Shown here piece by piece: positions 24,133 through 63,644 of a stretch of DNA of 64,000 bases. Made by a program: the position numbers and the translations under genes. Position 1 is the stretch's first letter. Each line of letters starts with the position of its first letter. The notes below the pieces were generated by a model, which saw only the letters and a program-made list of their open reading frames with translations, did no database searches and was not told the DNA's origin. Source of the stretch: Squalus acanthias. Lineage: Eukaryota. The DNA is taken from assembly GCA_030390025.1 (NCBI GenBank), contig CM059445.1:40176001-40240000 (forward strand), in the 5' to 3' direction.

Positions 24133-24784
24133 CCTAATGTTGGTTGCACTTGTAAAGAGCCTGACTCTCTGTTCCAGCAGAAGCCGACACCCACTTTTCT
24201 TTGCGAGCTGCTGCTGGACTTAATGGGCCTGTTTCCGGCCTGCGAAAAGTCTGCAGCTGGTTTAGTGCTTCAAAGCTGACCAATTAAAACCTTCAGTTTG
24301 AAATGGAGAACCATGGTGATGTTGCTGCACTGTGATCATGTGCCGAACATAGCTTTCTATTTTCCCCGTGGTCGTCATAAGGGCACAGTGATAATGGCAC
24401 CATGAGAGATAAAATAAACAAGGGAGGAAATTGCTGAGGTTGATATCGCTGCTCTTTAACTGTATACTCTATCTTTTGTAGCGATAGTCCTGTGGGGAAA
24501 AGGTGGGGATTGTGATCCATTACTATTCAAAGGGTGGTTTATGTTGTTTAGTACTATTCACAATTTGATTTAATCTATAGAAAAATAGATGCTGTTTAGA
24601 CTGTGAATTTGGACCATGTTCTAATGTCCTAAACCGTGTGGGCATTTCATGAATATAACTCATAACAGAACTTTAAGACTAAATTACAACCATTACTTCT
24701 CATCTGATCTTTCAGATAATCTATAATTATAAACATCTGTTTTATTACATCATTGTTTATATTCACACTATCCCGGTGGAAAAG

Positions 24785-43958: not shown

Positions 43959-43964
43959 TTTATT
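43959..43964 (-). promoter_or_regulatory. Candidate polyadenylation signal of gene B
   Basis: AATAAA on the minus strand, ~315 nt after the stop. Confidence 0.45.
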
Positions 43965-44278: not shown

Positions 44279-44378
44279 TCAGAATTCTGTTGTTGTTATT
44301 TTGTCCTTATGGGCATCAACATCTTCGACTGTGGCACTTTCGACCAATCTCCCTTGGTTCTCGTGTTGCTTTGAATTC
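44279..44378 (-). CDS. Gene B exon 7 (last): cytoplasmic tail RNSKQHENQGRLVESATVEDVDAHKDKITTTEF*
   Basis: Acceptor catttcttttctcattag|, phase 2 matching the 25-nt microexon; open for 32 codons to TGA. Confidence 0.75.
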
Positions 44379-44935
44379 CTAATGAGAAAAGAAATGCCAA
44401 AGCTGTGAGGGATGATTCTATCATTCTGCTGCAGTGAAGCTTAGTCAAGATCGACCTAAGAACATAAAGCACAGAATGAGCAAGGTAATTTAATCTATCG
44501 AATCAGCTTCTTCCACAGACATAGCACAACCTACCCTGCCATTGATTCCACCTAATCCATTTCATCTTTACTGCGGCACCGATGACTTATTTCACCATGA
44601 TTAGCTGCCAATTCTGCTCACGCGGTAACTCGAGCTTTCATGTCAAAGGATGATTCGCTGTCTTTGACTTGTCCACATTTTGGTAAAAAAGTTCTCGGAC
44701 TAGATTGGCTGAAAAAATGGCTTTATGACAATCCAACCAAGTTATTTAATTAACTGTCAAATCCTCACAGAGGTCTGGTAGATTTAAGAATGAATTATTG
44801 CTTCTAAAACAATGATGCTTATTACGTCTGCCTCTGCGTTATAACGAGAAGCTGAATGGTCTGTGCTCTGAGGGGAATGAAATGAATATTATTTGTGGTG
44901 GTACATCTGAGAGCAGATAATTGTTTGGATTTTGT

Positions 44936-45686
44936 GGGGGAAAAATTCAGCTGCTTGCGCCTCCCGTTAGCGCCCTAAGAGGGCGCTAATGGGGCGTAAA
45001 GCAGCTAACGCCCGGGCGCAGCGCCGCCCACGCCTCCCGCAAAATTCAGTGGGAGGTTAGCGGCGGCGCCAGCCGGTAGCGCCCTGTGGCGCTGCGCCAC
45101 CGGCGATGACGTAATCGCCGTGCGCAGCACCCCGCTCGCGCTCCAGCCGCGATCTTCAGTCGCGCCCCCTGATTTACCGCCAGACGCTATGTCCGACGGG
45201 TTCAGGGAGGCGTATGTGCGGCCGGGGCGGCGATATTTAAAGGGGAGGTGGCAGGCAGCCATTTTTGTTGCTGGCCGCCTGCCAGCACCTGCCCCCGTTG
45301 CTGTCCCCGGCCCCCGTGAAGCCCCCCCACCGTGAAGTGCCGGCTGCGCTCCAAGAGCCCGGCACTTCTCTTGAGTGCCGGGCTCTTTTGCCGGCACTCC
45401 CGATCCCTGGGGGCCCAGCTGGGCCCCGGTTCGCGCTGCGCAGGGTCCCTCCCCTTTAAGAAGGGGAGGAAGGCCTGCAATATCCTGGCGCTGCGGCACG
45501 TAGCGCCAGGATATTCCCTCGCAGCGCCCCAAGAGGGATGCGGGGTGCTTCCAGTGGCGCCCCGCTTCCCTCTTGGGGCGCAACCACTGAAGTTCCGGCG
45601 CGGGGCTGCTAATTTTTTCGGGGCACTAAAAGTAGCGCCCCGGCGAGGTTAGCGCCCCAAATGGGGCGCGACTCAATTTTTAGCCC
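44936..45686. mobile_element. GC-rich MITE (Harbinger-like) with internal hairpins
   Basis: Ends gggggaaaaatt ... aatttttagccc, flanked by tgt/tgt; related to 55929-56692. Confidence 0.75.
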
Positions 45687-45994
45687 TGTGTGTCTTATGC
45701 TACAGTCTCCAGTGATGCTGTTGATTAGGTTTTCTTCTTGCACTCTGTATTGTGCTTTGTTAGTGTGAAGTTCCAGTAAGGAGTCACATCCCAAATGTAT
45801 CATTTGTAATTTATATATACTGGGTAACACCTCTAAGTGCACTTGTCCTGTGTTCATGTCTTGTCTTGTCTCGGTTGAGTCGGCATACGCAGTCTAGGTG
45901 TATTCTGCCGACTTTGTAAGAGATTGGCTAGGACACCGGGGATAACTCCCCTGCTCTTCTTCAAAATCGTGCCATAGGATCTTTTACATCCACC

Positions 45995-46695
45995 GTGCAC
46001 TATCGCCCTTCAAGCCTTTTGATCTCTCTGCAGCCTCTGTCATGATCAATCACATCATCTCCTTCAATACCTCTCCTACCTTATCTAGCTCAGTGGGACT
46101 GCCCTCGCTTGGTTCCACTCTTACCTATTCAATCTCTAGGTAGAGCATCTCCAGTAATGGCTTCTCTTCCAGCCCTTTAACTGTTCCTTCCTGTTCCTTC
46201 CAAGGATCTATCCTTGACCCCATCTCCTTCCTCATTTGCACACCATCTGAAGACATGCAGTCAGCTTCCACATGCACACTGATGACACACAGCTCCACCA
46301 TCTGTCTCGAACCCTCCATTGCCTCTGTGTTGTCAAACTGCATATCTGACATTCAGTCTAATTAGGAACAAAGCCATAATCTTCGGCCCCACTACAAACT
46401 CTGCACCAGATTCAATGCCCCTTCATGACAACTGTCTCAGTTTGAACCAGACTGTTTGCAACCTTGGCTTCCTATTCGACCCAAAGCTGAGCTTCAAACC
46501 CCATATCCTCTCCATCATAAAGACTGCCTAAATTCCATCTCCATAACATCGCCCGCCTCTGCCCCTGCCTTAACCCATCATCTGATAAAACTCACATCCC
46601 AGCCTTTGTTACTTCCAGACTGGACTATTGCGATACTCTCCTGGCTGGCCCCCCATGCTTCACTCTGTGGAAACTTCAGTTCATCCAAACTCTGA
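45995..46695 (+). mobile_element. L2 LINE RT remnant
   Basis: Degenerate QGSILDP; VCNLGFLFDPKLSFKPHILSIIKTA; FVTSRLDYC. Confidence 0.75.
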
Positions 46696-46906
46696 TGTCT
46701 AGCAAAGTGCAAAAGGAAGCCAGGCTGTGGAGACAGCCACTGGTCATTCAGAGTCTGAGGTTTACAACTTCCTGAACTGTACACTGCAATGATAAAGGTT
46801 TGTTGCTTGGTGCTTGTATGTGTGCATGTTATTTGGTGCAAATTATGTCACAGTTGTTTAATCTATCATTTATACTGAAAGAGTAACAGGTTCGGTTGTG
46901 ACTTAC

Positions 46907-46931
46907 CTACAGTTGCAAGGGCTGTCCCGAT
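46907..46931 (-). CDS. Gene B exon 6: 25-nt cytoplasmic microexon DRDSPCNC(R)
   Basis: Near-consensus sites attcttctcattccacag| and AG|gtaagt; phase 1 to phase 2. Confidence 0.75.
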
Positions 46932-48022
46932 CTGTGGAATGAGAAGAATTATGTATTATTAAGAAAATTCTGCACTCTTTATATGCTTCATTATTGTGGC
47001 ATTTGGGAGGTTATTTCTTAAAGGTCCGTTTGATTATTATTGCATTGCAAGCCCTATTTTATACACTTCTGGTTATCGTTTCTGCATTGTCTTGATGCAT
47101 CAGTTGTTGCTGGTGTTTGGTGTTTTTTTGTTTGCTTTGCAACACTGTTGCTGCAGAATCCTTTGCCCACCACACTCTTGCTGATTGCTACTATTTTACA
47201 GGCAGTGTGCTCATTTTTCAGCATGAGAATTCCTTTTCGGAATTCCTATGGTGCTCCTAGATTTAGAAGAGGAAGCTAAGAAAATCAGGCATACTTTCAC
47301 CTGAGGCATTTGGTCCATTCTTGTCCTTGTTGCAGGAGCTACATGTTCAGGTCTTGGCAAACCTATCTACCTTTATTGTCTATAATTCACGATAGAGACT
47401 ATGACTGAATTATGCGGTCTTCTTGACCAGGACCTCCACACACAGGGACAGCTCTGTCGGGCATTGAAATGCAAAGCTACCATATCCTTCCAAGCCACCA
47501 CTTGATACTACAGTCCGGATGAAATCTCAGATTTCTTTAATGAAATAAATTGGCTTACTACATGTAAGCACATCTCTTAACCACCTCCACAATGACTGTG
47601 CATTGCTAAAAATTTTCAGAAATGTGTATTTTTTTCCCCAGCTTAAGCCCCTGTATTTCAGAACAAATTGAACATCTACACCTTTCTATTAATATTTATG
47701 TTTACAACCATCCTTTTAAATGACCATTTCATTTGATGCAGAGATTCAGCACTGAATAGCATGCTCATCCATCATCTGTGACATGCTATCTCTGCGACAC
47801 TTCATTTACTACATCTTGCAACCACTCTATACAACTGTAATAATGGTGTTGACTATCATTTTCCCATGACCAATCCTTATTGAGCAGGTTTGATGGCTTG
47901 ATTTTTTTGCTCATTCCAAATTCTCTTAACTAAACCAAATCACATCTAGTGGTGAATGAGTTAATGCCTATTAAGACTGTCACTTCACATTTGTGCTTCT
48001 CGTCAGCTATTGGTTAATTTAC

Positions 48023-48106
48023 CTTTCCATTTAATGCCCCAGATCAGTAATAAAATTACAGACACCGCAAAGATTGGCACTGATACAGATCGGACAGGAA
48101 AACTAC
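48023..48106 (-). CDS. Gene B exon 5: transmembrane SSFPVRSVSVPIFAVSVILLLIWGIKWK
   Basis: Acceptor ttttctgttccttcacag| and donor AAG|gtaaat; 84 nt, phase 1/1; hydrophobic run followed by a KWK stop-transfer. Confidence 0.85.
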
Positions 48107-50039
48107 CTGTGAAGGAACAGAAAAGTAGTTTGAGTTTCTCATGATCTGCTTCAGTGTAAAAAAATGGTGACAAATACTAGCTAAATTGCATTCCTGGTGA
48201 ACTGACTCAATATAGTAATATCTTCAAGATTTGTGAATTAAATTTCATTTTCTCCATTAGTGCCAGTGCAGGATCTCCGTCCCACTGTGCAGGAGGTAGG
48301 AATAGGTCAGTCCCGATTTCTACAATTCAGTAGGTCTTAGCCACGTAATATTACTATTTTAAGCTTAGTACAAACATCAGACCTGCATTACAGATAAAGT
48401 TATATTCACCAACACTGCTAATCTATCTGTATTTGAGTTGCTTTCCATCAATCCAGCTATTTTTTTTCAAGAATGATTGATATGCTGAAATATTGACTTC
48501 AGCCCTCGTGACATTTGTGCCTGGTGATCTAGGGCATGTTTATATACATATTCTAGAATCTTGGATATGATACACACTTCCATACATGTTGAATCACACT
48601 TTTAATATCAGCATTTAACATTGAAAATCCATAGGAAATATTTACTGTATAATGGAAGTCAACATTTATAATGGCAAAACTTGACCTAAATATAAACAAT
48701 TCACCATTAACAATTTGTCGTGAACCAATCAAATCATTCAAAATGCTTTTGAAAATAATTTCATCCACTTTTTTCCCCTCTGTAACTAAAATTTCTAATG
48801 TCCAAAATAAAGTTTTAAAGAAAAGAAATTAAAATTACATATTTCACAATAACATAATTAACTTTACCCACTAAGTTAACTTTTGATATCTTATTTGAAT
48901 TTTTCCTTCAAGGCCTGGGAATCAATGAGACTTTTTTAAATTTTACCTCACACCTGATGGAAACATTTTCAACCGCATCTGTGCATTTTGAGCATGTGCA
49001 GTTGGCAGAATTGTCGAACATGCAATCTGTGCATCAAGATGAGTTGATGCCCCTAATTTTGTCAGGATTTTAGAGATTGTACATTAACTTGTAGGTAAGT
49101 TATGTTTTTGAGAACACAAGCAAAGTTAGTGCTGTTGAGAGAGAAGAAGGATTAAATACTACGATGGCAGAGATGAATTATACTGAGATCTCTGAGGCCA
49201 GCACAAGCAGCTCAAAGAGAGATGAGACCACAAACTCTACTACGTTGATTTGAAAGAACAAGTTTGGAAAAGATGAAGGAATATTGCTAATGTTGTTAAA
49301 CTGCGAGCTTATCAGCAATGAACTGAATTAGCTAGTCTTAATATATCCGACATACTAACTATTCAAAGCTGTTAACTTGGCAGCTATATATGAAATCTAG
49401 CCTAAAGAAACCTTGCTGTATGTTAATCTTGGACCTTAAGTGTAATATCAACTTCTAATAAGTAGAGCCCAACTTATATTGATTTACTGTGATCCATTCA
49501 AACTGCTGTTGTAACCTCACATACTAATTGTCAGTTAATAACATCTACTCAAGTACCTTGTGTACTCATAATGTTTAACATTAAAATGCTGCTAATTGTA
49601 TTATCATAAGTATATTAATAATGAATTGTTAGTTCATGATTTCATTGCCTAACTTTCTCTTTTTGAGGTTATCTCCTTCCGTCAGTAGTGTACTGGCCCT
49701 CTGAAAGATGGTAATCCTCTAGATATGGATGGTAAATCACCAGATGATTTTTTTTGATGGGGAATTAAGGTGAAGAAGTTAAGGAGTCATCTGGTCCTTT
49801 TCTTAGGTACTATATCTTGCATGGTTTATGGCCTTACTGATCACAGAGTTAATTTTCCTACAGGTCTGTATACTGGAGAATTAAATCATCTTAGTTTGAC
49901 ATGTGAAAAGGCATTAGAAAGACAAAAGATGAGTTAATGTTTTAACTTTATAATAAATTAATCTTGTTTCAGTTTGTTCTACACTAAGAATTCATAATGA
50001 AGAAACATTCCCTTTTGCAGGTAGCATCATTGCACTTAC

Positions 50040-50357
50040 TTTTCCAACCAGATGTTATGTATATTCCTACAGCAAGTTCTTTCAAGCCATATTTATTTTC
50101 TGCTCTGCAAATATACTCTCCATTGTCTGAATCATCAACACTCCTTTTCGTCAAGCCAGAACTGTTTACTCCAGCTTCCAATTGTATGCTTTGCCCCAAT
50201 AATTTCTTTTGCCAGATAACTATGGGTTCTGGGTTACTGTGCGCTGTACATTTTAGTTCAAGAAATGACTGGGGCGTAACATGGATGCTGTCTTGGAGCA
50301 GTGGTTGAAGCTGATCTGAATCAGAAGTCCTGTAACGTATGATGGGCTGTGGACCAT
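50040..50357 (-). CDS. Gene B exon 4: I-set/C2 Ig domain
   Basis: 318 nt, phase 1/1; YGPQP...LELKCTAHSNPEPIVIW...DDSDNGEYICRAENKYG; canonical splice sites. Confidence 0.92.
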
Positions 50358-51239
50358 CTGAATCAGAACAATGGAAATGAAAAGTAATTAGTCATATAGG
50401 CAGCTTCGATAAAGCCTTGTAGAATTGTGTACATCTTGTCAGAGTACAGACAAAGCTGACTGGAAATTGAAACATCAATTGCAGCTATGTCCTTTCTGTA
50501 TAAATATGTATTGTGTATTACAATATTGATCCAAGGGCACAAAACTGTAAAAGAAAAGGACTGGGGTAACTGTTCTTCTTGATTACACTTATAAAAGGAC
50601 TAATTGTTAAAATGGAATTCTGTTTACATTTATTAGATGTGTATTCCTAACCAAAAGACAGGCAGACAAACCACTCCCAAGTTGACATCACTCGCAAACC
50701 AGTCTCTGTAATGTGCAAGAATAACACAGATTGACTTACCCTCCAATTTCCCCTCCCTTCTTTCTTGTGGTGGTATCTCTCCTGACCATCATGTTGTGAT
50801 CAGGAACATGTGAAGTCATACATGGAGAACTACGTTCTATCACTCTGACACAGCAAATCGGTCTGACAAGAATTTTTATGAATAGGAAAAAGCCCAACTG
50901 ACCAGGCCCATTTTAGTAGATGGACATCACCTTCTCAAGATTTCCCTCAATCTCTGTGTCTTCAGAAATACATCTAATAGGTTCTTGAGATCATTTATAT
51001 TATAATTCAGAAGTCTTTCCTTGTATTTTGTTTCATAAATTTATATCCCTTGTTTGAAAATGTCCCACTGACTTCCCCTTTTATTCCTACCTTTCTCATT
51101 TTTAATCTGGATCCCTTGGTATTTGAACCCTTCACCATAGTGAATAGTTTGCACAGATCAGATTTATCATTTTCATTAACATTATTGAAAATATCATTCA
51201 GGTTGCTTTGTAAACTTAAACATAAATTGCGGAAACCTG

Positions 51240-51457
51240 TTACCAATTAGGACGAAAGGTCATTNNNNNNNNNNNNNNNNNNNNNNNNNNNNNNNNNNNN
51301 NNNNNNNNNNNNNNNNNNNNNNNNNNNNNNNNNNNNNNNNNNNNNNNNNNNNNNNNNNNNNNNNNNNNNNNNNNNNNNNNNNNNNNNNNNNNNNNNNNNN
51401 NNNCTGCCTGACCTGCTGGGTATTTTCAGCATTTTCTGCTTTAATTACCAATTAGGA
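51240..51457 (+). mobile_element. Short Penelope terminal fragment spanning a 139-N assembly gap (51265-51403)
   Basis: gacgaaaggtcatt...ctgcctgacctgctgggtattttcagcatttt; 13-bp direct repeat ttaccaattagga on both flanks. Confidence 0.7.
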
Positions 51458-52189
51458 GTGTCATTTACCAACATGAGATCCATAGACTATAAGCCTACAT
51501 TGAAATCAACAATTTCTACAGGAAAAGCAGACAGCCTCAATGAGCAGTCTATTAGGTTCCAATACATTCATTAAAGAGAAATATATCCTGTTGAAAAGTA
51601 CATCATCTTAAGTGTAAAGTCCATCTTAAATGTTATAAAATGAGATTTCTGCACTTTTTGTTTCTTGCTGTCCCTTGTATTGCGTTTCCCTTTTTTCCCC
51701 AAAAGTGTTTTGGTGAATTTTTCGTGCTCATCAAGGCAAGGAATTTTAGCAAAGAAGAGTGGACCACCTTTTGATTTTAATCAATCACTGTCTGCTTCAA
51801 GTACTCCCAAGTCAAGTACAGCACAGCCAGTTTCAGAGTCAAACTCTTCCTACTCTGCCAAGTGATGTGCCTTTGCCCCAACTACAGAAGACCAACCCCA
51901 TCGGCAGGGCCAGTCGCTCAACTAATGTAAGACTATTACACACAGAAAAGACAGAAGGGCTTCATCCCAACCATCTGAGCTGGATCACAGAGCCAAAAGG
52001 ACAGTGTGCTAACTTGGACACTCCAAGCTCAGTCTGCCCATTCACATGGACACTGCAGCCTGACATTACCAAATTACCTTTTAAAGTTTCAGTGAAGCAG
52101 TTAGCATCTCAGACTTTCATCAGAAGTGTGCTACATAATCGAAAATTTAAAAAAGGCCATCAAAATACATAGTAATTTAACATACTTAC

Positions 52190-52540
52190 AATTCACATTT
52201 AGGGTTATACTTTTTATTATCCACTCTTTACTTGTCGTATGAAGGACCTGACAGGTACAGATTGTCCTATGGTCTTCTTGCAAGATGGGCTTAAAAATCA
52301 TTTGACTGGTAACATTAAATGTGCCATCCGAATTCCTTAAGGTGGGCAGTCTAGTCGTATATCTAATTTTATCATCTGCTTCTGAAGGTTGAGCATTGTG
52401 AGAAATGGTTTGATCTTGGTGTAGCCATTTAATAGAGATATTCTGAGGATAAAATCCACCAGCGAGGCACTTCACAATCGACTCATGCCCGGCTACTAGT
52501 TCTTCCAGAGTAATAGAAATTGCTGGAGGAGATGGTGGGA
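52190..52540 (-). CDS. Gene B exon 3: C1-set Ig domain
   Basis: 351 nt, phase 1/1; CLAGGFYPQNISIKW...NSDGTFNVTS...TCQVLH are C1 hallmarks. Confidence 0.95.
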
Positions 52541-53349
52541 CTGTAACAAACAATGCAAAATAAAGTTATGTTGTATTTAAATACTAAAGCAAACCAATGT
52601 CAAGCAAGCTTTACAAACTCAATGCATGTAGCAATTCCATTTCGATAAGGGAGTTATATTCGGGGTGCGACATGAATATAATTTGTATCTCATGATTGGT
52701 GAAGATCACGTAACCCATTGAGTGGCAGAGTTGCATAAAAGGACTCCCATTGGTGATAAGACTGCTATTTCAGTTATTCGTTTTAATGATTTTGTCTAAT
52801 AGGTCTAATTTTGCATGAGGCCCAATGTTCTTTTCAATGAGAATTGTGCGATTTCACCTCTTTAGGCCCAAACTCAGTAGATGCATATCAATGTGGACAA
52901 CACCTCTTCCTGTGCCATGGGTCACTGCTATTGTGATAGAGGTGCAGTTAGTATCTATATTCTCTTTATATTGTAGTGATGCTTTTGTGATTTATGTTGC
53001 TATTTTAAGATGCCAACAGATAGCCTGAAATTACATAGGATTTGTGGCATAATGCCTCAACATTTTTACTGGATTTTCAAGCAATGAAGGATCTGAAATT
53101 ATATTAGTTTTGTTTGTAAGATCTTAAGTTAAATTGAATTATTATGTATGATCAGGAAAAAAATAAGAATTGGAAAGGAAGAACCTAAATTATATGTATA
53201 TTATATTAACACTAATATTATAAAATGCCTAAATGGAGTTATTGCAGTTAAAGCTGGCATTTTCTAAGAAGCTACATATATATTTCCAGTTGTAAAATGT
53301 GCAGTCTCCCAGTGAGGTGCAAATATCATTAATGTTAAAAAAACATTTT

Positions 53350-53745
53350 AGGAAGTGACCACACATTCAAGGCCTTTGGTGAGGTCAGGGGGGTTGGAGA
53401 TGGGCCTGTGGTTTGCAAGGACAAAAGGGTCAAGGGTGACAAAGGAGTGGACGAGAGTTTCAGTGCTTTTGGGGGTGAGGTAGGAACATAGACATGTTAT
53501 GGAGGCGGAAGTAGCTAACCTTGTCAGTGGACTCCATGTGGAGTTTGAATCTTGGCTCTGGGTCAAACAAGACACTGAGGCGGCACTCAATTGGGTACAG
53601 CCTAAGCGAGCATTTGGGAAGCGGATTGGAATCACTGGTGGAGGCACAAAGACTGGTGGGAGCCAAAAAGAATGGCTTCAGTCTTGTTGATGCTGGGCTG
53701 GAGAAAGTGCTAACCTATCCACAACTTGATGTCAGACAGGCAGTT
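53350..53745 (-). mobile_element. L2 LINE remnant
   Basis: LSVLFDPEPRFKLHM...SYFRLHNM; TETLVHSFVTLD. Confidence 0.7.
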
Positions 53746-54467
53746 AATTATCAATTATTATTTTGCTTTCAGTCCCATTTGTTGGGGAGGAGAGTCAAAT
53801 GATTAGTTCAGTTAACCTGTCTTTTTGGGCCTTTATGGATTCCAAGAATAAAAAGTAATTGGACAGTACAGATGAGGAAGGGCCTAGGCCCAATCCCTGT
53901 GCTGAATTAGCCAATATCAGTTGAGGCTGATATACTGCAGTTGGCTTCAGCATTCCTGGACTATGGAGAAGAAATATGCCTCAGGGTTGGCACTGTGGAT
54001 TACCAATGTTGAATCCCTTCTGCTGAAGCTGTATCTGCAGGCCTGGGTTTAATTGTAATGGAGTAGGTCCACATTTTATTATACCCATAATTGGCTGAGG
54101 CACTGATCAGAATACCTACTGTAGAAAAGTGAATAAGAAAGAATAGAATGAGAAAAGGCCTGTGGCCCACCAAGTTCTTTCCAAATACCAAGTGCCATTT
54201 GCCCCATCATGAATTCACTGAATCCTCTAATAAAGCCCCAAAAGGTAAATCACACAGAACTCTAGACTACATATCCAACCTTACATCCAACATGAATTAT
54301 TTTTGACTAATTGCGCTTTCATGGTCCCAGCAGTTCAGAAATGATCACATTGGACACTGTGTTCCATTATCTTTACCTGTACTTATTATATTAAATTATT
54401 TACATGTAACAGTAGCTATACATATAAAACTATTGTCTATTTATGATAATATATACACCCAATTTAC

Positions 54468-54815
54468 CATCGACATGCAATCGTGTTCCTGGTCCTCTTC
54501 TCTCTAATGGCGGGTAGACAGTTGGTATCTTCACCACACAGGTATAATTATAATCAGAGAACTTGAAAGGAACATTTTCAATCTTCAATGATGCAACACA
54601 GTGCTTAAAACCACCCAGAGCAATGTCAAAAGTGCAGTTATGCTCATGACTTTCATTGGGAGTATCAGCGATTCCTGGAGGGCTTCTGTCCCAGTTTGTA
54701 TGGATCCAATCAGTCTCATTTGCAGTGTAATTAAAGATACAGTTTAACGTGACTGATTTTCCTCGCAGGACGCTGACCAGATGTGGCTGAGTCACCTCCC
54801 CAATCACCGGATGAC
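54468..54815 (-). CDS. Gene B exon 2: germline-joined VJ-type Ig domain
   Basis: 348 nt, phase 1/1; EVTQP...GKSVTLNC...W...SLKIENV...YTC...RGPGTRLHV (GxGT J motif in the same exon). Confidence 0.94.
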
Positions 54816-55928
54816 CTATGGAACAAAATGTATCAATTGCTGAATGTAATCTTAGACCCAGTCAGGCTCATCTAAAAATAACGGGGAAGATTTATTACTT
54901 ATTGTGAAATTGTAAATGTGTATAATTCACATGTTCACAATATTGCTACGAGAGAGGAAGTTATCCCATAATGAAGAAAATTACAGCAAAAAATCGTCAA
55001 ACGCATTTGGTGAATTTAAAAGTGTTTAAATTACAGAGTTAATCCCCTGCTTTATTAATGTGCATTTAGCTTATATAAGAATAATATGTGATTAGAATAG
55101 TCTTGTTTATAGTCCAGCAGTATATTGTATTCCTGATGTGTTGGGTTGCTTTGAAATAGTGTTGTATGTTGTGCAGAGGAAGAGAGGTACTGCCAGTAAA
55201 CGTGTTCCAGACGCAGCCAGCTCCAGGGTTCAGGGCAAGAGCTGTTCCACTAGCTTGGGCAGAATGGGGGGGGGTTAAGCTGAACCATCTCTTGTAATTG
55301 GAGAATCCTTGTAGGGCTGTAGCAATAGATACAAAAACTCCCACCGTAAGTTTGTAGGCAGGAGAACTTGTCTACTGTGCTCGTCCTACACACACAAGTT
55401 TGTGAGGGCCCGATGACTCAGTCTGATGACAGAGAAACGTTTTCACCATTTCCCTCAGTTATGTGGGTGAGTTGTATTCCCATCTATAGCCGGACAGAAC
55501 CTTGTCTGGGATGAAAATACTTGTTTGGTTGTTTGTTTGGTTGTTTCAAGAAAATATAACATCGACTAATATTGTTCTCTTTGCACCATCTTAAATTCTG
55601 AACCTGGTGACGCTAATCCTAAGTGTATCTTAATAAATAGACATCCTCTCATTAAAAATTTCCTTCCCTCACACTCATAAGGCATCTATTTGTTTCTTGG
55701 TTGGTTCCAGGGTTATTGTCTCCGCTACACTGCCTTGAAATCCATTCCATGTGTTGGTCACTCTTTGTGTGAAGAAACTGTAGCTTATACATGGAGGACA
55801 TCTCTAGGGTTTGAAATAGTAGCCTACAACATTTTTTATTAAATACTTGTAGCTGGAAATCACTACAGCTGTTAACTCGTAAACTTTAAGAGTTATGTAG
55901 CAACTTTAAGAATTGTGCATCAATCTAT

Positions 55929-56692
55929 GGGGGCAAAATTGGGTGCTTTGCACCTCCCATTAGCGCCCTCGGGGGGCGCTAACGGGACACAAATGGCTTT
56001 GCAACCGGACGCGGCGCTGACATCGACTCCCGCCATACTCGGTGGGAGTTTTGCGGCGGCACTATGGCGTTGCGCCCCGATCTCTTTCACCCGGAGATTG
56101 TGACGTCATCGCCATGCACATCGCCCCGGTAGCGCCCCAGACCCGAAATTGACTTCCGCCCCCTGCAGCAGCGCCGGGCGAAAAACACTGACAGCTGCAG
56201 GAGGCGCGCATCAGTCGGCCGGCCGCTTCGGGGGCGATGATTAAAGGCGAGGTGGCTGAGGTAAGTAAAAAAAACTTACCTTTCTTGTTCCAGTTTTTTT
56301 TGTGGGTTCCTGCCCGCGATCGATCAGCCCGGCTCTCTGCTTGAGTGCCGGGCTGATCGCGCGGGATCGCGGCTGCCTTGGTGGTCCAGGTGGGTAATTT
56401 TTCTATTGCAGAGCCTGCAGCGATGGCCCTTCCCTTTAAGGGAGGGAAGGAGCCTTTGAATGCGGCGGCGCTGCACGGCCCAGTGTGCAGCGCTGCTGAA
56501 ATCTCCGCTACGCCTTGCTGCTGACTGCGCTCCAAGAAGGAAGTGGAGCGGTTTAGCGGTTTAGCGCTCCACTTCCTTCTTGGAGCGCAAAACCGAATTT
56601 TTTAAAAGTTTGGAAACATTAGCGCCTGGCACTAATTTTCCAAACTTTTAAAATTTAGCACCCCAAACGGGGATATAATGAATTTCTCCCCC
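55929..56692. mobile_element. GC-rich MITE (Harbinger-like) with a perfect 25-bp hairpin
   Basis: Ends gggggcaaaatt ... aatttctccccc; related to 44936-45686. Confidence 0.75.
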
Positions 56693-57413
56693 ATATGTTT
56701 AATTTAAATTGTAGCACTAATGATGGATTAAGGCACTGATCAGTACATGTCGATAGATTTTTGTTTGGTAAGGGTATAAAGAGATATGGAGCAAAGGCAA
56801 GTAAATGGAGTAGAGTTGCAGATCAGTTATGACCTAATAGAATGACTGTATAGGCTCGAGGGGTTGAATGGCCTACTCCTGTTCCTAAGTATAATTATAC
56901 TGCCACTTTCACATCAAAGGGGAAATGGTTTCAGGGCGTAACAACACAAAAGTGGACGTATAACCTGGTTTGGATCAGCATCCGTCTCCCCAACACACTA
57001 AAGTAAGAATTGGAACACTGTGCAGTTATACTGTGACTACAGTCTGTTTGGCGCTTACATGAGTTGCAGTATAACTCCAGCCCAGTGCAAAGTCAGTTTT
57101 TGAAAGTACCCAGGCCTTTCATTGAATCCCCTGGGAACTTCAGAAACATCTTTTAAAAATCTTTTTAATGGCTTGAGAAAGTCCGCCACCCTGACCGTGC
57201 TCTCATAATGTTAAAAATGAATCGTCCGTGAACAGAGCTCTGTGCAAGCATACACGCACACAGTTCGGCTGTAGTTAATTTACAGTGTGAGGTGCAGTCA
57301 GCAGTGTATCGCAGATCTGCTGGCGGACCATCACACTCTATAGATACCGGTCTGAGTGCTACCTGTGGTATTCCAGCACCCTTTGATATTAATGATCAAA
57401 ATAATTGTATAAT

Positions 57414-57740
57414 TATAAATCTCTAAGCATGTCCTCTTCTGTCTACAACCAGAAAGGGCATTGATTATCATCACCACACATTGTATGTATAATGAGAGTC
57501 TTGGAAATAAACTGTCAATCTTCAGCAATCCAACAATTGCTGCTCAGACCACCTGATTCAAGGTCAGAAATGCAGGTCACGCTATTCCCCTTTAAAATAT
57601 CCGATTGTCAAAGTAAAGCCCCTGTACCAGGCTGTGTGGATCCAGTCAGCATAATTAAATATACAGTTCAATATGACAAACTGAACTCTCAAGGGCACTG
57701 ACTAGATGCTGCAGAGTCACCTCCTCAACAACCAGGACAC
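57414..57740 (-). pseudogene. Frameshifted duplicate V exon in gene B intron 1
   Basis: Successive frames give EEVTLQHLVSAL / VILNCIFNYADWIHTAW / TCISDLESGG / LKIDS / CVVMI, collinear with exon 2; upstream intron sequence is also homologous; the donor is lost. Confidence 0.88.
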
Positions 57741-57870
57741 CTGATGGGATCAAATGTCTCATCTGCTGAACATAATCTGAGACCTGATCGCACACTTTTA
57801 CCTGTAATATTATAAAGAAAATCACAATGACAAAATTTTTAAAAAAAACAAGGAACACCATGAACACAGA

Positions 57871-60510: not shown

Positions 60511-60571
60511 ATTTTACAGTATATAATCTCAGTTCACAAACTAAATCATTGTTAAAGCACAATATGTTACA

Positions 60572-60995
60572 AAAGAAAAGTAAGACTTGCATTTATATAG
60601 CGCCTTTCACAACCACCGGACCTCTCAAAGCGCTTTACAGTCAATAAAGTACTATTTGAAGTGGGAAACGCAGCAGCCAATTTGCGCACAGCAAGGTCCC
60701 ACAAACAGCAATGTGATAATGACCTATAATCTGTTTGTGTTATGTTGCTTGATAACTCCCCTGCTCTTCTTCGAAATAGTGCCATGGGATCTTTTACATC
60801 CACCTGAGAGAGCAAACGGGGCTTCGGTTTAATGTCTCATCCGAAAGATGGCACCTCCCGACAGTGAAGCACTCCCTCAGTACTGCACTGGAATGTCAGC
60901 CTAGATTAAGTGTGCTCAAGTGTCTAGAGTGGGACTATGAACCCACAACCTTCTGACTCAGAGGCGAGTGCGCTACCAACTGAGCCACAGCTGAC
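60572..60995 (-). mobile_element. tRNA-derived Deu-domain SINE, full length
   Basis: Reverse complement of the 6628-7062 family (actccctcagtactgcactg; ctaccaactgagccacagctgac). Confidence 0.88.
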
Positions 60996-61251
60996 AGAAG
61001 TTAAGTAATAACCTCTAAATTCACTCTAAAGATTCTGTACAGCTACAAAACATGTTACACTGTGAACATTCTGGGTTTTAGTGCCCGACCCTCCCTCTGA
61101 ACTTCAATCTACAACAAGATTCCAGCAAAATCCGCACTCTGGAAATGTTGACCAAATCTGTACTTTATCAGTAAGGAATTTTCCATCACTTTATTCTATT
61201 AAAACATGAGCTACTAAGTGGAAACTTTGTATCAAATTAATATATTTAAGT

Positions 61252-63440
61252 TATACGAACATACGAATTAGGAGCAGGAGAAGGCCACTCGGCCCTTCGA
61301 GCCTGCTCCACCATTCAATAAGATCATGGCTGATCCGATTATTCCACATTCCCGCCTACCCTCGATAACTTTTCACCCCCTTGCTTACCAAGAATCTATC
61401 TACCTCTGCCTTAAAAATATTCAAAGACTCTGCTTCCACCGCCCTCTGAGGAAGAGAGTTCCAAAGACTCACAACCCTCTGTGAGAAAAAATTTCTCCTC
61501 ATCTCTGTCTTAAATGGGCGACCCCTTATTTTTTAACAGTGACCCCTAGTTCTAGATTCTCCCACAAGAGGAAACATCCTCTCCACATCCACCCTGTCCA
61601 GACCCCTCAGGATCTTATATGTTTCAATCAAGTCACCTCTTATTCTTCTAAACTCCAGCGGATACAAGCCTAGCCTGTCCAACCTTTCCTCATAAGACAA
61701 CCCGCCCATTCCAGGTATTAGTCTAGTAAACCTTCTCTGAACTGCTTCCAATGCATTTACATCCTTCCTTAAATAAGGAGACCAATACTGTACACAGTAC
61801 TCCAGATGTGGTCTCACCAATGCCCTGTATAACTGAAGCATAACCTCCCTACTTTTGTATTCAATTCCCCTCACAACAAACGATAACATTCTATTAGCTT
61901 TCCTAATTACTTGCTGTACCTGCATAGTAACCTTTTGTGATTCATGCACTAGGACACCCAGATCCCTCTGCATCTCAGAGCTCTGCAATCTCTCACCATT
62001 TAGATAATATGCTTCTTTTTTATTCTTCCTGCCAAAATGGACAACTTCACATTTTCCCACATTATACTCCATTTACCAGATCTTTGCCACTCACTTAACT
62101 TATCTATATCCCTTTGTAGCCTCCTTATGTCCTCTTCACAATTTACTTTCCTACCTATCTTTGTGTCATCAGCAAATTTAGCAAACATACCTTCGGGCCC
62201 TTCATCCAAGTCATTTATATAAATTGTAAAAAGTTGAGGCCCCAGCACTGATCCCTGTGGCACACCACTCATTACATCTTGCCAATCAGAAAATGACCCA
62301 TTTATGCCTACTCTCTGTTTCCTGTTAGCTAGCCAATTTTCTATCCATGCCAATATGTTGCCCCCTACACCATGACCTTTTATTTTCCGCAATAACCTTT
62401 GATGTGGCACCTTATCAAATGCCTTCTGGAAATCTAAGTACAGTACATCCACTGGTTCCCCTTTATCCACAGCACATGTTACTTCCTCAAAGAACTCCAA
62501 TAAATTGGTTAAACATGATTTCCCTTGCACAAAACCATGTTGACTCTGCCTGATTACTTTGAACTTTTCTAAATGCCCTGCTATAACGTCTTTAATAATA
62601 GCTTCTAACATCTTCCCTATGACAGATGTTAAGCTAACTGGTCTGTAGTTTCCTGCTTTCTGTCTCCCTTTTTGAATAAAGCAGTTACATTCGCTATTTT
62701 CCAATCTAATGGAACCTTTCCCGAATCTAGGGAATTTTGGAAAATTAAAACCAACGCATCAACTATCTCACTAGCCACTTCTTTTAAGACCCTAGGATGA
62801 AGTCCATCAGGACCTGGGGACTTGTCAGCCCGCAGCTCCAACAATTTGCTCAGTACCACTTCCCTGGTGATTATAATTTTCTTGAGCTCCTCCCTCCCTT
62901 CCATTTCCTAGTTTACAGCTATTTCTGGGATGTTTATTGTATCCTCTATAGTGAAGACCGATGCAAAATACCTGTTCAAAACAACTACCATCTCCTTATT
63001 TTCCATTATTAATTCCCCAGACTTACTTTTTATAGGACCAACGCTCACTTTGTTAACTCTTTTCTTTTTTAAATATCTATAGAAACTCTTACTATCTGTT
63101 TTTATATTTCTAGCTAGCTTTCTCTCATACTCTAATTTGTCTCTCCTTATTAATCTTTTAGTCATTTATTGCTGTTTTTTATATTCTGTCCAATCTTCTG
63201 ACCTGTCATCCATCTTTGTGCAATTATATGCTTTTTCTTTCAGTTTAATACTATCTATAACTTTTTTAGTTAACCACGGATAGTGGGTTCTCCCCTTGGA
63301 ATTTTTCATTCTTGTTGGAATGTATATATTCTGTGTATTTTGAAATGTCCCCTTAAATGTCTGCTACTGCAACTCTATTGACCTATCCCTTAACCTAATT
63401 TGCCAGTTCACTTTAGCTAGCTCTGCTTTCATGCCCTCAT
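61252..63440 (-). mobile_element. CR1 LINE, 5'-truncated, frameshifted ORF2
   Basis: ORFs 62908-63165, 62629-62904, 62000-62704 and 61533-62072 carry the full RT motif series. Confidence 0.96.
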
Positions 63441-63586
63441 AATTATATTAATTACTACAGACATTTTCTTTGAATGATCCCGTAGTGTTACTCTTAACTG
63501 TTTAGTATTCGTTTGTGATGAGCCGCAGTCAGAACCAAATCTGTAATACAGAGATTGGATTAAAAGACTTTAATCAGAGCACTAAC

Positions 63587-63644
63587 CTGTTACACCAGTC
63601 TGTGTCAGAAGGAACACCAACAGCTGCAGTAATATGCTCTCCAT
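63587..63644 (-). CDS. Gene B exon 1: signal peptide MESILLQLLVFLLTQTGVT(G)
   Basis: 58 nt; ATG followed by G; hydrophobic core; phase-1 donor CAG|gttagt matching the phase-1 V exon. Confidence 0.85.

What the first reader, a model, noticed from the sequence alone, without database searches (positions are those of the whole stretch)
44279..63644. Complete 7-exon receptor with unusual VJ-C1-I architecture: a non-rearranging, antigen-receptor-like molecule
Seen: exons 63644-63587, 54815-54468, 52540-52190, 50357-50040, 48106-48023, 46931-46907 and 44378-44279 join with matching phases into 1284 nt (427 aa). The ORF track shows only fragments of this. Known: V plus C1 pairing is largely restricted to Ig/TCR, tapasin, SIRP, B7-H6 and some nectin-like proteins, and germline VJ-C1 molecules are discussed as models for the pre-RAG antigen receptor. 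Inference: a GxGT-type VJ domain followed by C1 and then an I/C2 domain fits none of these families cleanly (SIRP is V-C1-C1, B7-H6 is V-C1). It may be an undescribed cartilaginous-fish immune receptor family.
Basis: partly seen in the sequence, partly recalled or inferred. Interest (0 to 1): 0.88.

Follow-up and report, generated by a model that had tools for sequence, protein, structure and literature searches.

The report
Shark VJ-C1-I receptor, short-tailed form
This is a real seven-exon shark gene for a membrane protein whose outer part looks like an unrearranged antibody light chain plus one extra domain; it belongs to a family found only in sharks and rays that databases mislabel as Siglecs and that no paper we could find describes.

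Summary
All seven minus-strand exons are open in the stated phases and have AG/GT splice sites. The N gap lies in intron 3, beside a high-copy repeat. Nothing here shows continuity across it directly. A sawshark orthologue (P0001, 70-76% identical per exon) is colinear from the V exon to the stop, with no extra residues at that junction.

Pfam calls the domains V-set, C1-set and I-set. The germline-joined GxGT end is kept in every relative.

The gene is one of two subfamilies found in 18 named elasmobranch species and nowhere else. NCBI names them Siglec-, MAG- or sialoadhesin-like. The window gene is the short-tailed form, with no tyrosine and a conserved [S/T]-x-[F/L] C-terminus. The sister subfamily carries three ITIM/ITSM-like motifs.

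The V-C1 unit matches human SIRP-alpha best. The V profile matches Ig lambda, TCR-alpha and IgNAR V domains.

It is not UrIg, a Siglec, a SIRP or a CD28-family member by their defining features. No RNA data were available, so expression is untested. Seven literature searches found no description.

The scan noted other, unchecked VJ-C1 families on other pieces of this genome.

Verdict: a new variant of the non-rearranging VJ-C1 receptor kind, of moderate interest.

The parts
63587..63644 (-). Exon 1: start codon and most of a hydrophobic leader (19 codons plus 1 nt; phase-1 donor)
   Evidence: Translation. GT donor. The leader resembles those of the long-tailed paralogues (L-rich stretch followed by T-x-x-G).
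57400..57745 (-). Dead duplicate of the V exon inside intron 1, with frameshifts, stops and a 12-nt deletion
   Evidence: tblastn found 61% identity over 28 residues in one frame and 64% over 14 in another. All three frames hold stops. The DNA alignment to the live V exon has 78% mean column identity. One Hemiscyllium paralogue, P0024, carries two live V domains.
54468..54815 (-). Exon 2: V-set domain with a germline-joined J-like G strand (G-P-G-T-R-L-H-V), a Y-P-P loop four residues before it, and an extra Cys pair
   Evidence: Open frame. Pfam V-set at 26 bits, equal to the cut-off; the orthologue scores 35.4 bits and P0016 45.1 bits. Invariant columns include 4 Cys, P-P and G-x-G-T. The profile hits Ig lambda, TCR-alpha and IgNAR V domains.
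52190..52540 (-). Exon 3: C1-set domain (G-F-Y-P ... C-Q-V-L-H)
   Evidence: Open frame. Pfam C1-set 42.8 bits against C2-set_2 24.1 bits. The best single-domain solved match is human B7-H6 C1 at 42.5 bits, then SIRP-gamma and SIRP-alpha d3 and Ig C domains. All Atlas neighbour clusters listed are 97-100% C1-set.
51265..51403 (.). Assembly gap (139 N) inside intron 3, left unfilled
   Evidence: N run. A high-copy repeat lies at 51404-51447, and the relative's contigs also break here. The orthologue is colinear across the C1-to-I junction.
50040..50357 (-). Exon 4: I-set domain
   Evidence: Open frame. Pfam I-set 39.9 bits and Ig_3 40.8 bits. Solved matches are contactin-2, MAG D3, DSCAM and titin. 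Against the relative there are 8 substitutions, 6 of them non-synonymous, and no listed indel.
49984..50039 (-). Possible secretory tail if the exon-4 donor is read through: 18 codons with three Cys, then a stop
   Evidence: Translation. It resembles the C-termini of the TM-less models P0008 (Scyliorhinus canicula) and P0009 (Hemiscyllium ocellatum). tblastn alignments of both run past the exon end. This is inference only.
48023..48106 (-). Exon 5: stalk and transmembrane segment, with no charged residue inside the hydrophobic stretch
   Evidence: Translation. 73% identical to P0001 residues 342-371.
46907..46931 (-). Exon 6: 25-nt microexon encoding the juxtamembrane P-C-N-C
   Evidence: Translation and splice sites. 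The orthologue has the matching residues between its TM and tail matches. Only the first Cys is kept in all five tails.
44279..44378 (-). Exon 7: acidic cytoplasmic tail without tyrosine, ending T-E-F and a stop
   Evidence: Translation. 69% identical to P0001 residues 378-406. The C-terminus fits [S/T]-x-[F/L] in 5 of 5 short-tailed proteins that reach the end.
43959..43964 (-). First AATAAA downstream of the stop (317 nt), a candidate polyadenylation signal
   Evidence: Pattern scan. Not tested with RNA.

Best explanation
The locus is an intact gene for a type I membrane glycoprotein of the immunoglobulin superfamily. Its parts are a leader, a V domain with a germline-joined J-like G strand, a true C1-set domain, an I-set domain, a transmembrane segment without an internal charge, and a 42-residue (by exon lengths) tyrosine-free tail.

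It is the short-tailed member (subfamily A) of a two-branch receptor family restricted to sharks and rays. The sister branch (subfamily B) has the same ectodomain plan and a long tail with three ITIM/ITSM-like tyrosine motifs, so it most likely signals inhibition through SH2 phosphatases.

I infer that the two branches work as paired receptors in the manner of SIRP-alpha and SIRP-gamma. The V domain, probably through its Y-P-P ... G-x-G-T loop, binds the same or a related ligand in both branches. B delivers inhibition. A does not; instead it is anchored or scaffolded through a juxtamembrane cysteine (probably palmitoylated) and a conserved class-I PDZ-type C-terminus, acting as an adhesion, co-receptor or competing partner. 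Read-through of the exon-4 donor may add a secreted form.

Shown: the gene structure, the domain types, the family, its taxonomic range and the tail motifs. Inferred: ligand sharing, the signalling roles, PDZ coupling, the secreted form and any immune function.
For: - Gene structure: open frames and splice sites.
- Orthologue: P0001 matches exon by exon at 70% (V), 75% (C1), 72% (I), 73% (TM) and 69% (tail) identity.
- Domain types: Pfam V-set, C1-set and I-set; all C1 Atlas neighbours are C1-set.
- Range: the exhaustive HMMER scan with the V exon gave 14 hits at E<=0.001 among 1.84 billion representatives. The 8 that belong to the family are all elasmobranch. Word-index searches added more, giving 18 named species, 13 sharks and 5 batoids.
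- Two branches: A and B are each one side of a branch in the C1 tree (SH-aLRT 96 and 99) and the I tree (100 and 100). A includes a stingray, so the split predates the shark-ray divergence.
- V kept more alike: the window is 42-58% identical to B in V, 30-37% in C1 and 28-43% in I, while the orthologue is 70%, 76% and 71%. The internal A-B branch is about 0.3 in the V tree against 1.05 (C1) and 1.2 (I).
- Tails: B tails carry x-I-Y-A-[VF]-V, V-[SP]-Y-A-D-I and S-[EV]-Y-S-[VA]-V. A tails have no such tyrosine motif and end in [S/T]-x-[F/L] in 5 of 5.
- SIRP likeness: human SIRP-alpha is the top solved-structure hit for the orthologue's V-C1 (62.3 bits, d1-d2 colinear). SIRP-alpha and SIRP-beta are the first non-elasmobranch hits for full-length P0001. 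hhalign of the family against SIRPs gives 99.1% probability over 277 colinear columns.
- Linkage: A and B proteins list the same longest-contig length in 3 of 3 species that have both with contig data.
Against: - No RNA evidence at all. No RNA run holds the stretch, and the three runs laid are genomic contigs of a close relative.
- Exon 4 differs from that relative at the intron rate (2.5% against 2.8%), with 6 of 8 changes non-synonymous. Constraint on that domain is therefore weak on a short time scale: relaxed or diversifying selection cannot be told apart.
- The short tail has no charged TM residue, so it is not a classical DAP12/FcR-gamma activating partner. The PDZ reading rests on three terminal residues only.
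- The higher V similarity could reflect gene conversion or faster divergence of C1 and I, rather than a shared ligand.
- The hhalign result has no comparator families, and any multi-Ig proteins align with high probability.
- The V exon alone did not find SIRP among its 14 hits, and SIRP d1 is not in the top 60 of the V-profile search.
- No B gene lies in this window, so local pairing is not shown.
Confidence: 0.55

Rival explanations
1. It is the elasmobranch orthologue or co-orthologue of the SIRP family. The ancestral SIRP was V(J)-C1 plus a third domain, which stayed or became I-set in elasmobranchs and C1-set in tetrapods. The A and B branches would correspond to the short-tailed and ITIM-bearing SIRPs and bind a CD47-like ligand.
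For: - SIRP-alpha is the top solved hit for the orthologue's V-C1 (E 5e-16, d1-d2 colinear), and SIRP-gamma also ranks high.
- SIRPs are the only non-elasmobranch hits below 1e-7 for full-length P0001.
- BLASTP of P0001 against pig SIRP-alpha gives 28% identity over 238 residues, with matching G-P-G-T-R-L, P-S-x-P-x-I-S and G-F-[YF]-P-Q-N-I-S-[IL]-K-W stretches.
- hhalign is colinear over all three domains.
- The paired tail logic is the same.
Against: - The third domain is I-set, not C1-set.
- In the C1 tree the SIRP domains sit outside A+B on very long branches, and the support is only 83.
- Ig light chains score nearly as well as SIRP (56.5 against 62.3 bits), so the signal may be generic VJ-C1 likeness.
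- The V profile does not bring SIRP d1 into the top 60.
- A 2026 survey places conservation of the SIRP family at Tetrapoda (PMC13262535, passages seen).
- Synteny could not be tested.
Confidence: 0.2
2. It is a direct relic of the non-rearranging antigen-receptor precursor, a third lineage beside UrIg and UrIg2. Its V domain would then be specifically related to the V exon invaded by the RAG transposon.
For: - 57 of the 60 best solved-structure matches of the V profile are Ig light or heavy chain, TCR-alpha or IgNAR V domains, several aligned through the J part.
- Whole Ig light chains align colinearly with V-C1.
- The VJ unit is a single exon with a phase-1 split leader.
- UrIg2 is among the better solved hits (53.8 bits; 72.6 bits with the family profile).
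Against: - The Protein Data Bank is dominated by antibodies, so their rank is partly a matter of composition, and the best E-value is only 2e-5.
- The UrIg2 score is the sum of three weak domain matches; the best is 22 bits.
- The third domain is not C1.
- Intron 1 is 8.8 kb, unlike the short leader introns I recall for antigen-receptor genes.
- Linkage to the MHC or the antigen-receptor complex is unknown.
- The family was not found in chimaeras or bony vertebrates, which suits a lineage-specific origin as well as an ancient relic.
Confidence: 0.1
3. It is what the automatic names say: a Siglec- or MAG-type sialic-acid-binding lectin of sharks.
For: - NCBI and UniRef names such as Siglec 8 and 10-14, MAG-like and sialoadhesin-like.
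- The I-set exon hits MAG D3 at E 4e-14.
- The family profile aligns its C1-I part colinearly with MAG D2-D3 (92.8 bits) and Siglec-8 D2-D3 (72.2 bits).
- B tails end in an S-E-Y-S-V-V motif that I recall as resembling the distal Siglec motif.
Against: - The V domain keeps the canonical B-F cysteine pair; both are invariant. As I recall, Siglecs have instead a B-E intrasheet disulfide and an essential F-strand arginine, and no arginine is seen in that strand here.
- The second domain is C1-set in Pfam (42.8 bits against 24.1 for C2-set_2). No Siglec or MAG is in the top 60 solved hits of the C1 exon or of the V exon or V profile.
- No Siglec V has the G-x-G-T end, as far as I recall.
Confidence: 0.05
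4. The window copy is a decaying or non-functional gene, and the intact frames are a recent accident.
For: - Exon 4 changes at the intron rate against a relative about 97% identical, with 6 of 8 changes non-synonymous.
- A dead V exon lies in intron 1.
- There is no RNA evidence.
Against: - Seven exons are open with six intact intron boundaries.
- Identity to a sawshark orthologue is 70-76% in every exon, including the microexon and the tail motif.
- None of the 12 listed indels (of 17) against the relative falls in exons 2-4.
- Eight substitutions are too few to measure selection.
Confidence: 0.08

Closest known systems
SIRP family (SIRP-alpha, -beta, -gamma)
   Same: - An N-terminal V domain with a J-like G-x-G-T end, followed directly by a C1-set domain.
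- Three Ig domains, one TM segment, and paired long ITIM tails and short tails.
- A short-tailed member without a charged TM residue, like SIRP-gamma (recalled).
- SIRP-alpha is the best solved-structure hit for the orthologue's V-C1, and SIRPs are the first non-elasmobranch database hits.
   Different: - The third domain is I-set, not C1-set.
- The V domain has an extra conserved Cys pair and a Y-P-P loop.
- The short tail ends in a PDZ-type motif.
- Identity is only about 28%.
- The V exon alone does not retrieve SIRPs.
- Synteny and CD47 binding are untested.
UrIg and UrIg2 (non-rearranging shark VJ-C1 genes; PMC12227049, abstract and sections 4 and 7 read)
   Same: A single-exon VJ domain with a split leader, followed by a C1-type domain. 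Restricted to elasmobranchs. Not rearranging.
   Different: - UrIg is VJ plus three C1 domains and is secreted only. Nurse shark UrIg2 is VJ plus nine C1 domains and a TM segment (section 7). Here there is one C1 and then an I-set domain.
- The best single-domain match to UrIg2 is only 22 bits.
- There is no evidence of MHC or antigen-receptor-complex linkage.
B7-H6 (NCR3LG1)
   Same: A V-C1 ectodomain. Human B7-H6 C1 is the best single-domain solved match of the window's C1 exon (42.5 bits over residues 5-102).
   Different: B7-H6 has two Ig domains. The alignment to the orthologue's V-C1 covers only the end of V plus C1 (46.5 bits). The V domains are otherwise unlike each other.
CD28/CTLA-4 family (PMC11599192, abstract and passages read)
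   Same: The CDR3-like loop has [VI]-[YF]-P-P four residues before G-x-G. This recalls the CTLA-4 signature [M/L/I]-[Y/F]-P-P-P-Y with G-x-G, and the CD28X pattern quoted in that paper. Atlas feature neighbours include PD-1 clusters and two CTLA-4 clusters sharing 196 and 192 of 256 features (a lead only).
   Different: According to that paper's abstract, every CD28-family member has a single extracellular V domain. Here there are three Ig domains. Only two prolines are present, and their spacing from the F-strand Cys differs by two residues. No CD28, CTLA-4 or PD-1 chain is in the top 60 solved hits.
Siglecs / MAG (the automatic database names)
   Same: The I-set third domain and the tyrosine motifs of the long-tailed branch resemble them.
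   Different: The V domain has the canonical disulfide and a J-like end. The second domain is C1-set.

Membership tests
SIRP | N-terminal V-set domain with a J-like G strand | tested here: met
   G-P-G-T-R-L-H-V lies at the end of the V exon. G-x-G-T is invariant in 6 of 6 aligned V domains. It aligns to the G-x-G-T of human and pig SIRP-alpha.
SIRP | Two membrane-proximal C1-set domains (V-C1-C1) | tested here: not met
   Domain 2 is C1-set at 42.8 bits. Domain 3 is I-set/Ig_3 and has no C1-set hit at E<=1.
SIRP | Specific sequence grouping with SIRPs over other VJ-C1 proteins | tested here: inconclusive
   SIRP-alpha is the top solved hit for V-C1, but Ig light chains are within 6 bits of it. 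The V exon and V profile do not retrieve SIRP d1. In the C1 tree the SIRP domains are long-branched outgroups.
SIRP | Conserved synteny with the SIRP locus; CD47 binding | not testable with these tools
The rest of the window holds only repeats and one unidentified Ig gene. Binding needs a bench test.
UrIg / UrIg2 | [quoted passage not shown] | tested here: met
UrIg / UrIg2 | All following domains of C1 type (three in UrIg, nine in nurse shark UrIg2; PMC12227049 sections 4 and 7) | tested here: not met
   There is one C1-set domain and then an I-set domain.
UrIg / UrIg2 | Linkage to the MHC (UrIg) or to the IgH/TCR-alpha-delta complex (UrIg2) | not tested
Siglec | V-set with a non-canonical B-E disulfide and an essential F-strand arginine (criteria recalled, not from a call) | tested here: not met
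   The canonical B-strand and F-strand cysteines are invariant (C25 and C92). The F strand reads Y-N-Y-T-C-V-V-K, without arginine.
Siglec | C2-set domains after the V domain | tested here: not met
   Domain 2 scores C1-set 42.8 bits against C2-set_2 24.1 bits. Its 60 best solved matches hold no Siglec.
CD28/CTLA-4 family | [quoted passage not shown] | tested here: not met
   There are three Ig domains.
CD28/CTLA-4 family | P-P-P-type motif in the CDR3 loop, with or without G-x-G | tested here: inconclusive
   [YF]-P-P followed by four residues and G-x-G-T is invariant in the family. It has two prolines, not three, and is offset by two residues relative to the pattern quoted.
B7-H6 / B7 | Two-domain V-C ectodomain with a B7-type V | tested here: not met
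   There are three domains, and only the C1 domain matches well.
Nectin / PVR / CRTAM | V then a C2-set_2-type domain then C2, with sequence likeness to nectins | tested here: not met
   No nectin, PVR, TIGIT, CADM or CRTAM chain is among the 60 best solved hits of the V, C1 or I exons, the orthologue's V-C1 or the V profile.
Elasmobranch 'Siglec-like' VJ-C1-I family, subfamily A (defined here) | A-type C1 and I domains, short tyrosine-free tail, C-terminal [S/T]-x-[F/L] | tested here: met
   The window groups with A in the C1 tree (support 96) and the I tree (support 100).

The most novel reading that the evidence does not exclude
Sharks and rays keep a third, unnamed lineage of germline-joined VJ-C1 receptors beside UrIg/UrIg2 and the SIRPs. 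Its V domain is closest to Ig lambda and TCR-alpha V domains. It carries a CTLA-4-like Y-P-P ... G-x-G loop. It comes in an inhibitory and a scaffold-coupled membrane form, and it can be switched to a secreted form by reading through the last ectodomain donor, as immunoglobulin genes do. On this reading it would be a living intermediate linking SIRP-type paired receptors, CD28-type co-receptors and antigen receptors, and would show what a pre-RAG receptor system looked like as a working signalling pair.
Probability: 0.12. Interest if true: 0.85.

Novelty: new variant of a known kind. Interest (0 to 1): 0.52.

Why it matters
Proteins that pair a V domain with a C1 domain are few, and they lie at the centre of the debate on how antibodies and T-cell receptors arose. 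Published candidates for unrearranged relatives in sharks are UrIg and UrIg2. A recent survey dates the SIRP family only to tetrapods (PMC13262535, passages seen).

A family with a germline VJ-C1 unit, present in both sharks and rays, would add an independent data point at the base of the jawed vertebrates. It has an inhibitory branch and a short-tailed branch, and its V domains have stayed much more alike than its other domains. It would also correct the Siglec, MAG, sialoadhesin and syg-2 names carried by 30 of the 33 database proteins collected here.

In practice it gives comparative immunologists a defined receptor pair to express, to stain cells with and to use in a ligand search. The value is limited for now because neither expression nor function is known, and because other, unchecked VJ-C1 families seem to be common in this genome.

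Tried and rejected
- **RNA evidence.** The look-up of sequencing runs (kind rna) listed no RNA holder. The three holders were laid on 50000-54850 and proved to be genomic contigs of a relative about 96-97% identical, running through the introns.
- **Structure.** There is no model.
- **Neighbours in the window.** Positions 1-44200 hold mainly reverse-transcriptase and LINE-like ORFs and a minisatellite, plus one Ig-domain exon at about 9511-9807 (+). That exon matched only generic Ig families and gave no synteny clue.
- **C1-only database search.** The word-index search with P0001 residues 120-235 had 13 candidates and returned only the query, so it says nothing.
- **Joined-protein steps.** The orthologue P0001 served as a proxy.
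- **UrIg membership.** UrIg2 looked like the top hit, but the score is the sum of three weak domain matches. Rejected.
- **Siglec, nectin/PVR, CD28-family and B7-H6 membership.** Rejected on the features listed in the membership table.
- **Lck-clasp reading of the juxtamembrane C-x-C.** The second Cys is present only in the window gene and P0001, 2 of 5 short tails, so a single conserved Cys is the more cautious reading.
- **Gene conversion of V between the branches.** The V tree is compatible with an old A/B split if rooted on the A branch. Only the branch lengths differ, so conversion is not shown.
- **Literature.** The searches were for UrIg, Siglec with shark, B7H6 and NKp30 with shark, PRARP (only unrelated meanings were found, and the PRARP paper itself is not in the library, so what I know of it is recalled), SIRP with cartilaginous fish, shark with ITIM and C1-set and nonrearranging with shark and SIRP. 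Passages in PMC12227049 were also checked. None describes a V-C1-I family in elasmobranchs. Supplements were closed; the supplementary tables of PMC12227049 and PMC11599192 might list such genes.
- **Rows dropped.** For the trees, matches shorter than 80 residues were left out. These were the V fragments of P0008 and P0009 and the C1 fragment of P0019.

Full report
**The observation**

Exon 1 (63644-63587) starts with ATG and encodes a hydrophobic leader of 19 codons plus one base. Read in frame 1, exons 2 to 4 are full of stops. Read in the phase set by the running length, each is open from end to end:
- exon 2: 115 codons
- exon 3: 116 codons
- exon 4: 105 codons
- exon 5: 27 codons
- exon 6: 7 codons
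- exon 7: 32 codons and TGA

Every intron starts with GT and ends with a pyrimidine tract and AG. All searches were made exon by exon or with database proteins.

**The assembly gap**

The only N run is 51265-51403. It lies in intron 3, about 790 nt beyond the donor of the C1 exon and about 910 nt before the acceptor of the I-set exon. No exon or reading frame runs into it.

Continuity across it is not shown by data. Contigs of a closely related genome also stop at 51167 and resume at 51412, and 51404-51447 is a repeat with word depth above 100,000. The gap is therefore a repeat-caused break.

Homology argues that no coding exon is hidden in it. The orthologue P0001 passes from residue 235 to 237 between the two exons. 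Every family member that has both domains shows the same direct junction. Identity to P0001 is even on both sides of the gap (75% and 72%), which speaks against a chimeric scaffold.

**Domain types**

Pfam gives the following:
- exon 2: V-set, 26 bits, exactly at the cut-off. The orthologue scores 35.4 bits and a skate paralogue 45.1 bits.
- exon 3: C1-set, 42.8 bits, against C2-set_2 at 24.1 bits.
- exon 4: I-set at 39.9 bits and Ig_3 at 40.8 bits.

Atlas feature neighbours of the C1 exon are all clusters in which 97-100% of members are C1-set.

The V exon ends in G-P-G-T-R-L-H-V directly before the donor, so V and J are joined in the germline.

**Relatives**

An exhaustive HMMER scan of 1.84 billion representative proteins with the V exon gave only 14 hits at E<=0.001. 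Six are strong (E 3e-44 to 4e-22) and two are short fragments, and all eight come from sharks or rays. The other six are weak hits to multi-Ig proteins.

Word-index searches with two of these proteins added more members. In all, 18 named species are represented: 13 sharks and 5 batoids. No chimaera or bony vertebrate appeared, which does not prove absence. Of the 33 family proteins collected, 30 are named as Siglecs (8 and 10-14), 'myelin-associated glycoprotein-like', 'sialoadhesin-like' or 'synaptogenesis protein syg-2-like'; the other three are 'uncharacterized' or 'hypothetical'.

**Two subfamilies**

*Subfamily A.* It holds the window gene and the following proteins:
- P0001 (Pristiophorus japonicus)
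- P0017 and P0009 (Chiloscyllium plagiosum and Hemiscyllium ocellatum)
- P0019 and P0008 (two Scyliorhinus species)
- P0018 (the stingray Hemitrygon akajei)

P0001 matches the window exon by exon: V 70%, C1 75%, I 72%, TM 73% and tail 69%. Its residues between the TM and tail matches correspond to the 25-nt microexon. This is independent support for the whole model, microexon included.

A tails are short and lack the tyrosine motifs of subfamily B. They keep one juxtamembrane Cys and an acidic V/Y-E-D stretch. They end in T-E-F, S-E-F, S-E-L or S-K-L, that is [S/T]-x-[F/L], in 5 of the 5 that reach the end. That fits a class I PDZ ligand; the consensus is recalled. The TM segment has no internal charge.

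*Subfamily B.* It was found in 16 species and has the same ectodomain plan, with a long tail carrying x-I-Y-A-[VF]-V, V-[SP]-Y-A-D-I and S-[EV]-Y-S-[VA]-V. These are one ITSM-like and two ITIM-like motifs.

*Trees and linkage.* In maximum-likelihood trees of the C1 and I domains, A and B are each one side of a branch (SH-aLRT 96 and 99; 100 and 100). Because A includes a stingray, the split is older than the shark-ray divergence. A and B proteins list the same longest-contig length in Hemiscyllium and both Scyliorhinus species. That suggests the same chromosome in 3 of 3 cases with data, though the distance between them is unknown. No B gene lies in the window.

**Uneven divergence between the branches**

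Identity of the window gene to the orthologue and to B members, by domain, with the internal A-B branch length in each tree:

| Domain | Identity to orthologue | Identity to B members | Internal A-B branch |
|---|---|---|---|
| V | 70% | 42-58% | about 0.3 |
| C1 | 76% | 30-37% | 1.05 |
| I | 71% | 28-43% | 1.2 |

The path from the window to its orthologue is 0.42, 0.25 and 0.45 in the three trees. So V evolves at least as fast as the other domains between orthologues, yet has stayed far more alike between the two branches.

This is the pattern expected of paired receptors that see the same or related ligands. Gene conversion, or accelerated change of C1 and I, are alternatives that I cannot exclude. 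The V tree is compatible with an old split if rooted on the A branch.

**What the domains resemble**

*C1 exon alone.* The best single-domain solved match is human B7-H6 C1 (42.5 bits), then SIRP-gamma and SIRP-alpha d3 and Ig constant domains. UrIg2 heads the list only because three weak domain scores (22, 8.5 and 15 bits) are summed.

*Orthologue's V-C1 (residues 1-235).* Solved-structure scores:
- human SIRP-alpha: 62.3 bits, E 5e-16, d1-d2 colinear (top hit)
- an IgG1/IgG4 hybrid heavy chain: 60.6 bits
- an IgA1 heavy chain entry: 57.1 bits
- whole Ig light chains aligned colinearly: up to 56.5 bits
- SIRP-gamma: 55.1 bits
- UrIg2: 53.8 bits
- B7-H6: 46.5 bits

SIRP-alpha and SIRP-beta are also the first non-elasmobranch hits for full-length P0001. 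BLASTP against pig SIRP-alpha gives 28% identity over 238 residues, with matching J, hinge and G-F-[YF]-P-Q-N-I-S motifs. hhalign of the family against three SIRP-type proteins is colinear over 277 columns at 99.1% probability. I had no comparator families, and multi-Ig proteins generally align well.

*V domain.* A V-only profile of six sequences finds Ig light or heavy chain, TCR-alpha and IgNAR V domains in 57 of its 60 best solved hits and MPZL1 in the other three. The best E-value is 2e-5, and several alignments run through the G-x-G-T. SIRP d1, CTLA-4, PD-1 and NKp30 are not among those 60. The Protein Data Bank is dominated by antibodies, which inflates their rank.

Atlas feature neighbours of the V exon include PD-1, 'putative antigen receptor' and two CTLA-4 clusters (196 and 192 shared features). 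These are leads only.

The family-invariant [YF]-P-P, four residues, then G-x-G-T recalls the CTLA-4 and CD28X signatures quoted in PMC11599192. That family, however, has a single V domain by definition (abstract).

*I-set exon.* It resembles contactin-2, MAG D3, DSCAM and titin. That similarity, with the tyrosine tails, explains the automatic Siglec and MAG names.

*Why it is not a Siglec.* The V domain has the canonical B-F cysteines, which are invariant. The F strand has no arginine. Domain 2 is C1-set.

**Constraint and expression**

No RNA run holds the stretch. The three runs laid are genomic contigs of a relative about 96-97% identical, so splicing and expression remain untested.

None of the 12 listed indels (of 17) against that relative falls in exons 2-4. 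Exon 4 carries 8 substitutions (2.5%, against 2.8% in the adjoining intron). Six change the residue and none makes a stop. Recent constraint on that domain is therefore weak, or selection is diversifying. The sample is too small to tell.

**Most likely function**

- Shown: an intact gene for a type I membrane protein with a VJ-C1-I ectodomain, belonging to the short-tailed branch of an elasmobranch-only family.
- Inferred: it is the non-inhibitory partner of ITIM/ITSM-bearing paralogues, as SIRP-gamma is to SIRP-alpha. It would bind a related ligand through the V domain and be held by palmitoylation and a PDZ scaffold rather than signalling through tyrosines or a DAP12-type adaptor.
- Possible extra: if the exon-4 donor is read through, the frame continues for 18 codons with three Cys before a stop. 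This tail resembles the C-termini of the TM-less database models P0008 and P0009. The first three residues follow from the donor consensus itself, so only the remaining residues count as conservation.

**Novelty**

The kind is known: non-rearranging VJ-C1 receptors such as SIRP, UrIg and UrIg2. PMC11599192 also lists CD79, NITR, CD8, NKp30 and PRARP among proteins with joined VJ domains. The combination VJ-C1-I with these two tail types, restricted to elasmobranchs, matches no described family in seven full-text searches. The proteins are in public databases under misleading names. Supplements, which might list such genes, were closed.

Other first-stage notes on this genome report many VJ-C1-TM-ITIM and 'SIRP-like' genes on other pieces. 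They are unchecked, and I did not test them. I rate this a new variant of a known kind, of moderate interest.

Noticed in passing
window 57400-57745 (-), inside intron 1: There is a dead copy of the V exon with a 12-nt deletion, frameshifts and stops. One Hemiscyllium paralogue (P0024, 610 aa) has two live V domains in tandem, so V-exon duplication recurs in this family.
   Followed up: partly
window 49984-50039 (-), just past the exon-4 donor: Reading through the donor gives an 18-codon Cys-rich tail and a stop. It is similar to the C-termini of TM-less models in Scyliorhinus canicula and Hemiscyllium ocellatum. This may be a membrane/secreted switch like that of Ig genes.
   Followed up: partly
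window about 9511-9807 (+): This is an Ig-domain exon of a neighbouring gene, with AG and GT boundaries and extra cysteines. It gave only generic Ig hits (Ig_3 30.6 bits; weak CD4 D2, pIgR, CADM and CRTAM matches), so its identity is unresolved.
   Followed up: partly
window 23425-24223 (both strands): A minisatellite with a unit of about 36 nt gives long repetitive ORFs in several frames (units such as W-R-S-A-E-D-G-V-C-V-V-L).
   Followed up: no
window 29-907, 1438-3644, 11379-11834, 13031-13429, 20972-22572, 40271-40907: Several reverse-transcriptase and LINE-like ORF fragments lie on both strands. They make up much of the 44 kb downstream of the gene.
   Followed up: no
window 51404-51447: A very high-copy repeat (word depth above 100,000 in three runs) abuts the assembly gap. 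A second, moderately repeated stretch lies at about 53240-53725 in intron 2.
   Followed up: no
proteins P0001-P0036 (other species): The long-tailed subfamily B is named Siglec 8, 12, 13 or 14 or MAG-like in 14 of its 16 species. Its C1-like domain scores only 19-29 bits on Pfam C1-set, against 43-49 bits in subfamily A.
   Followed up: partly
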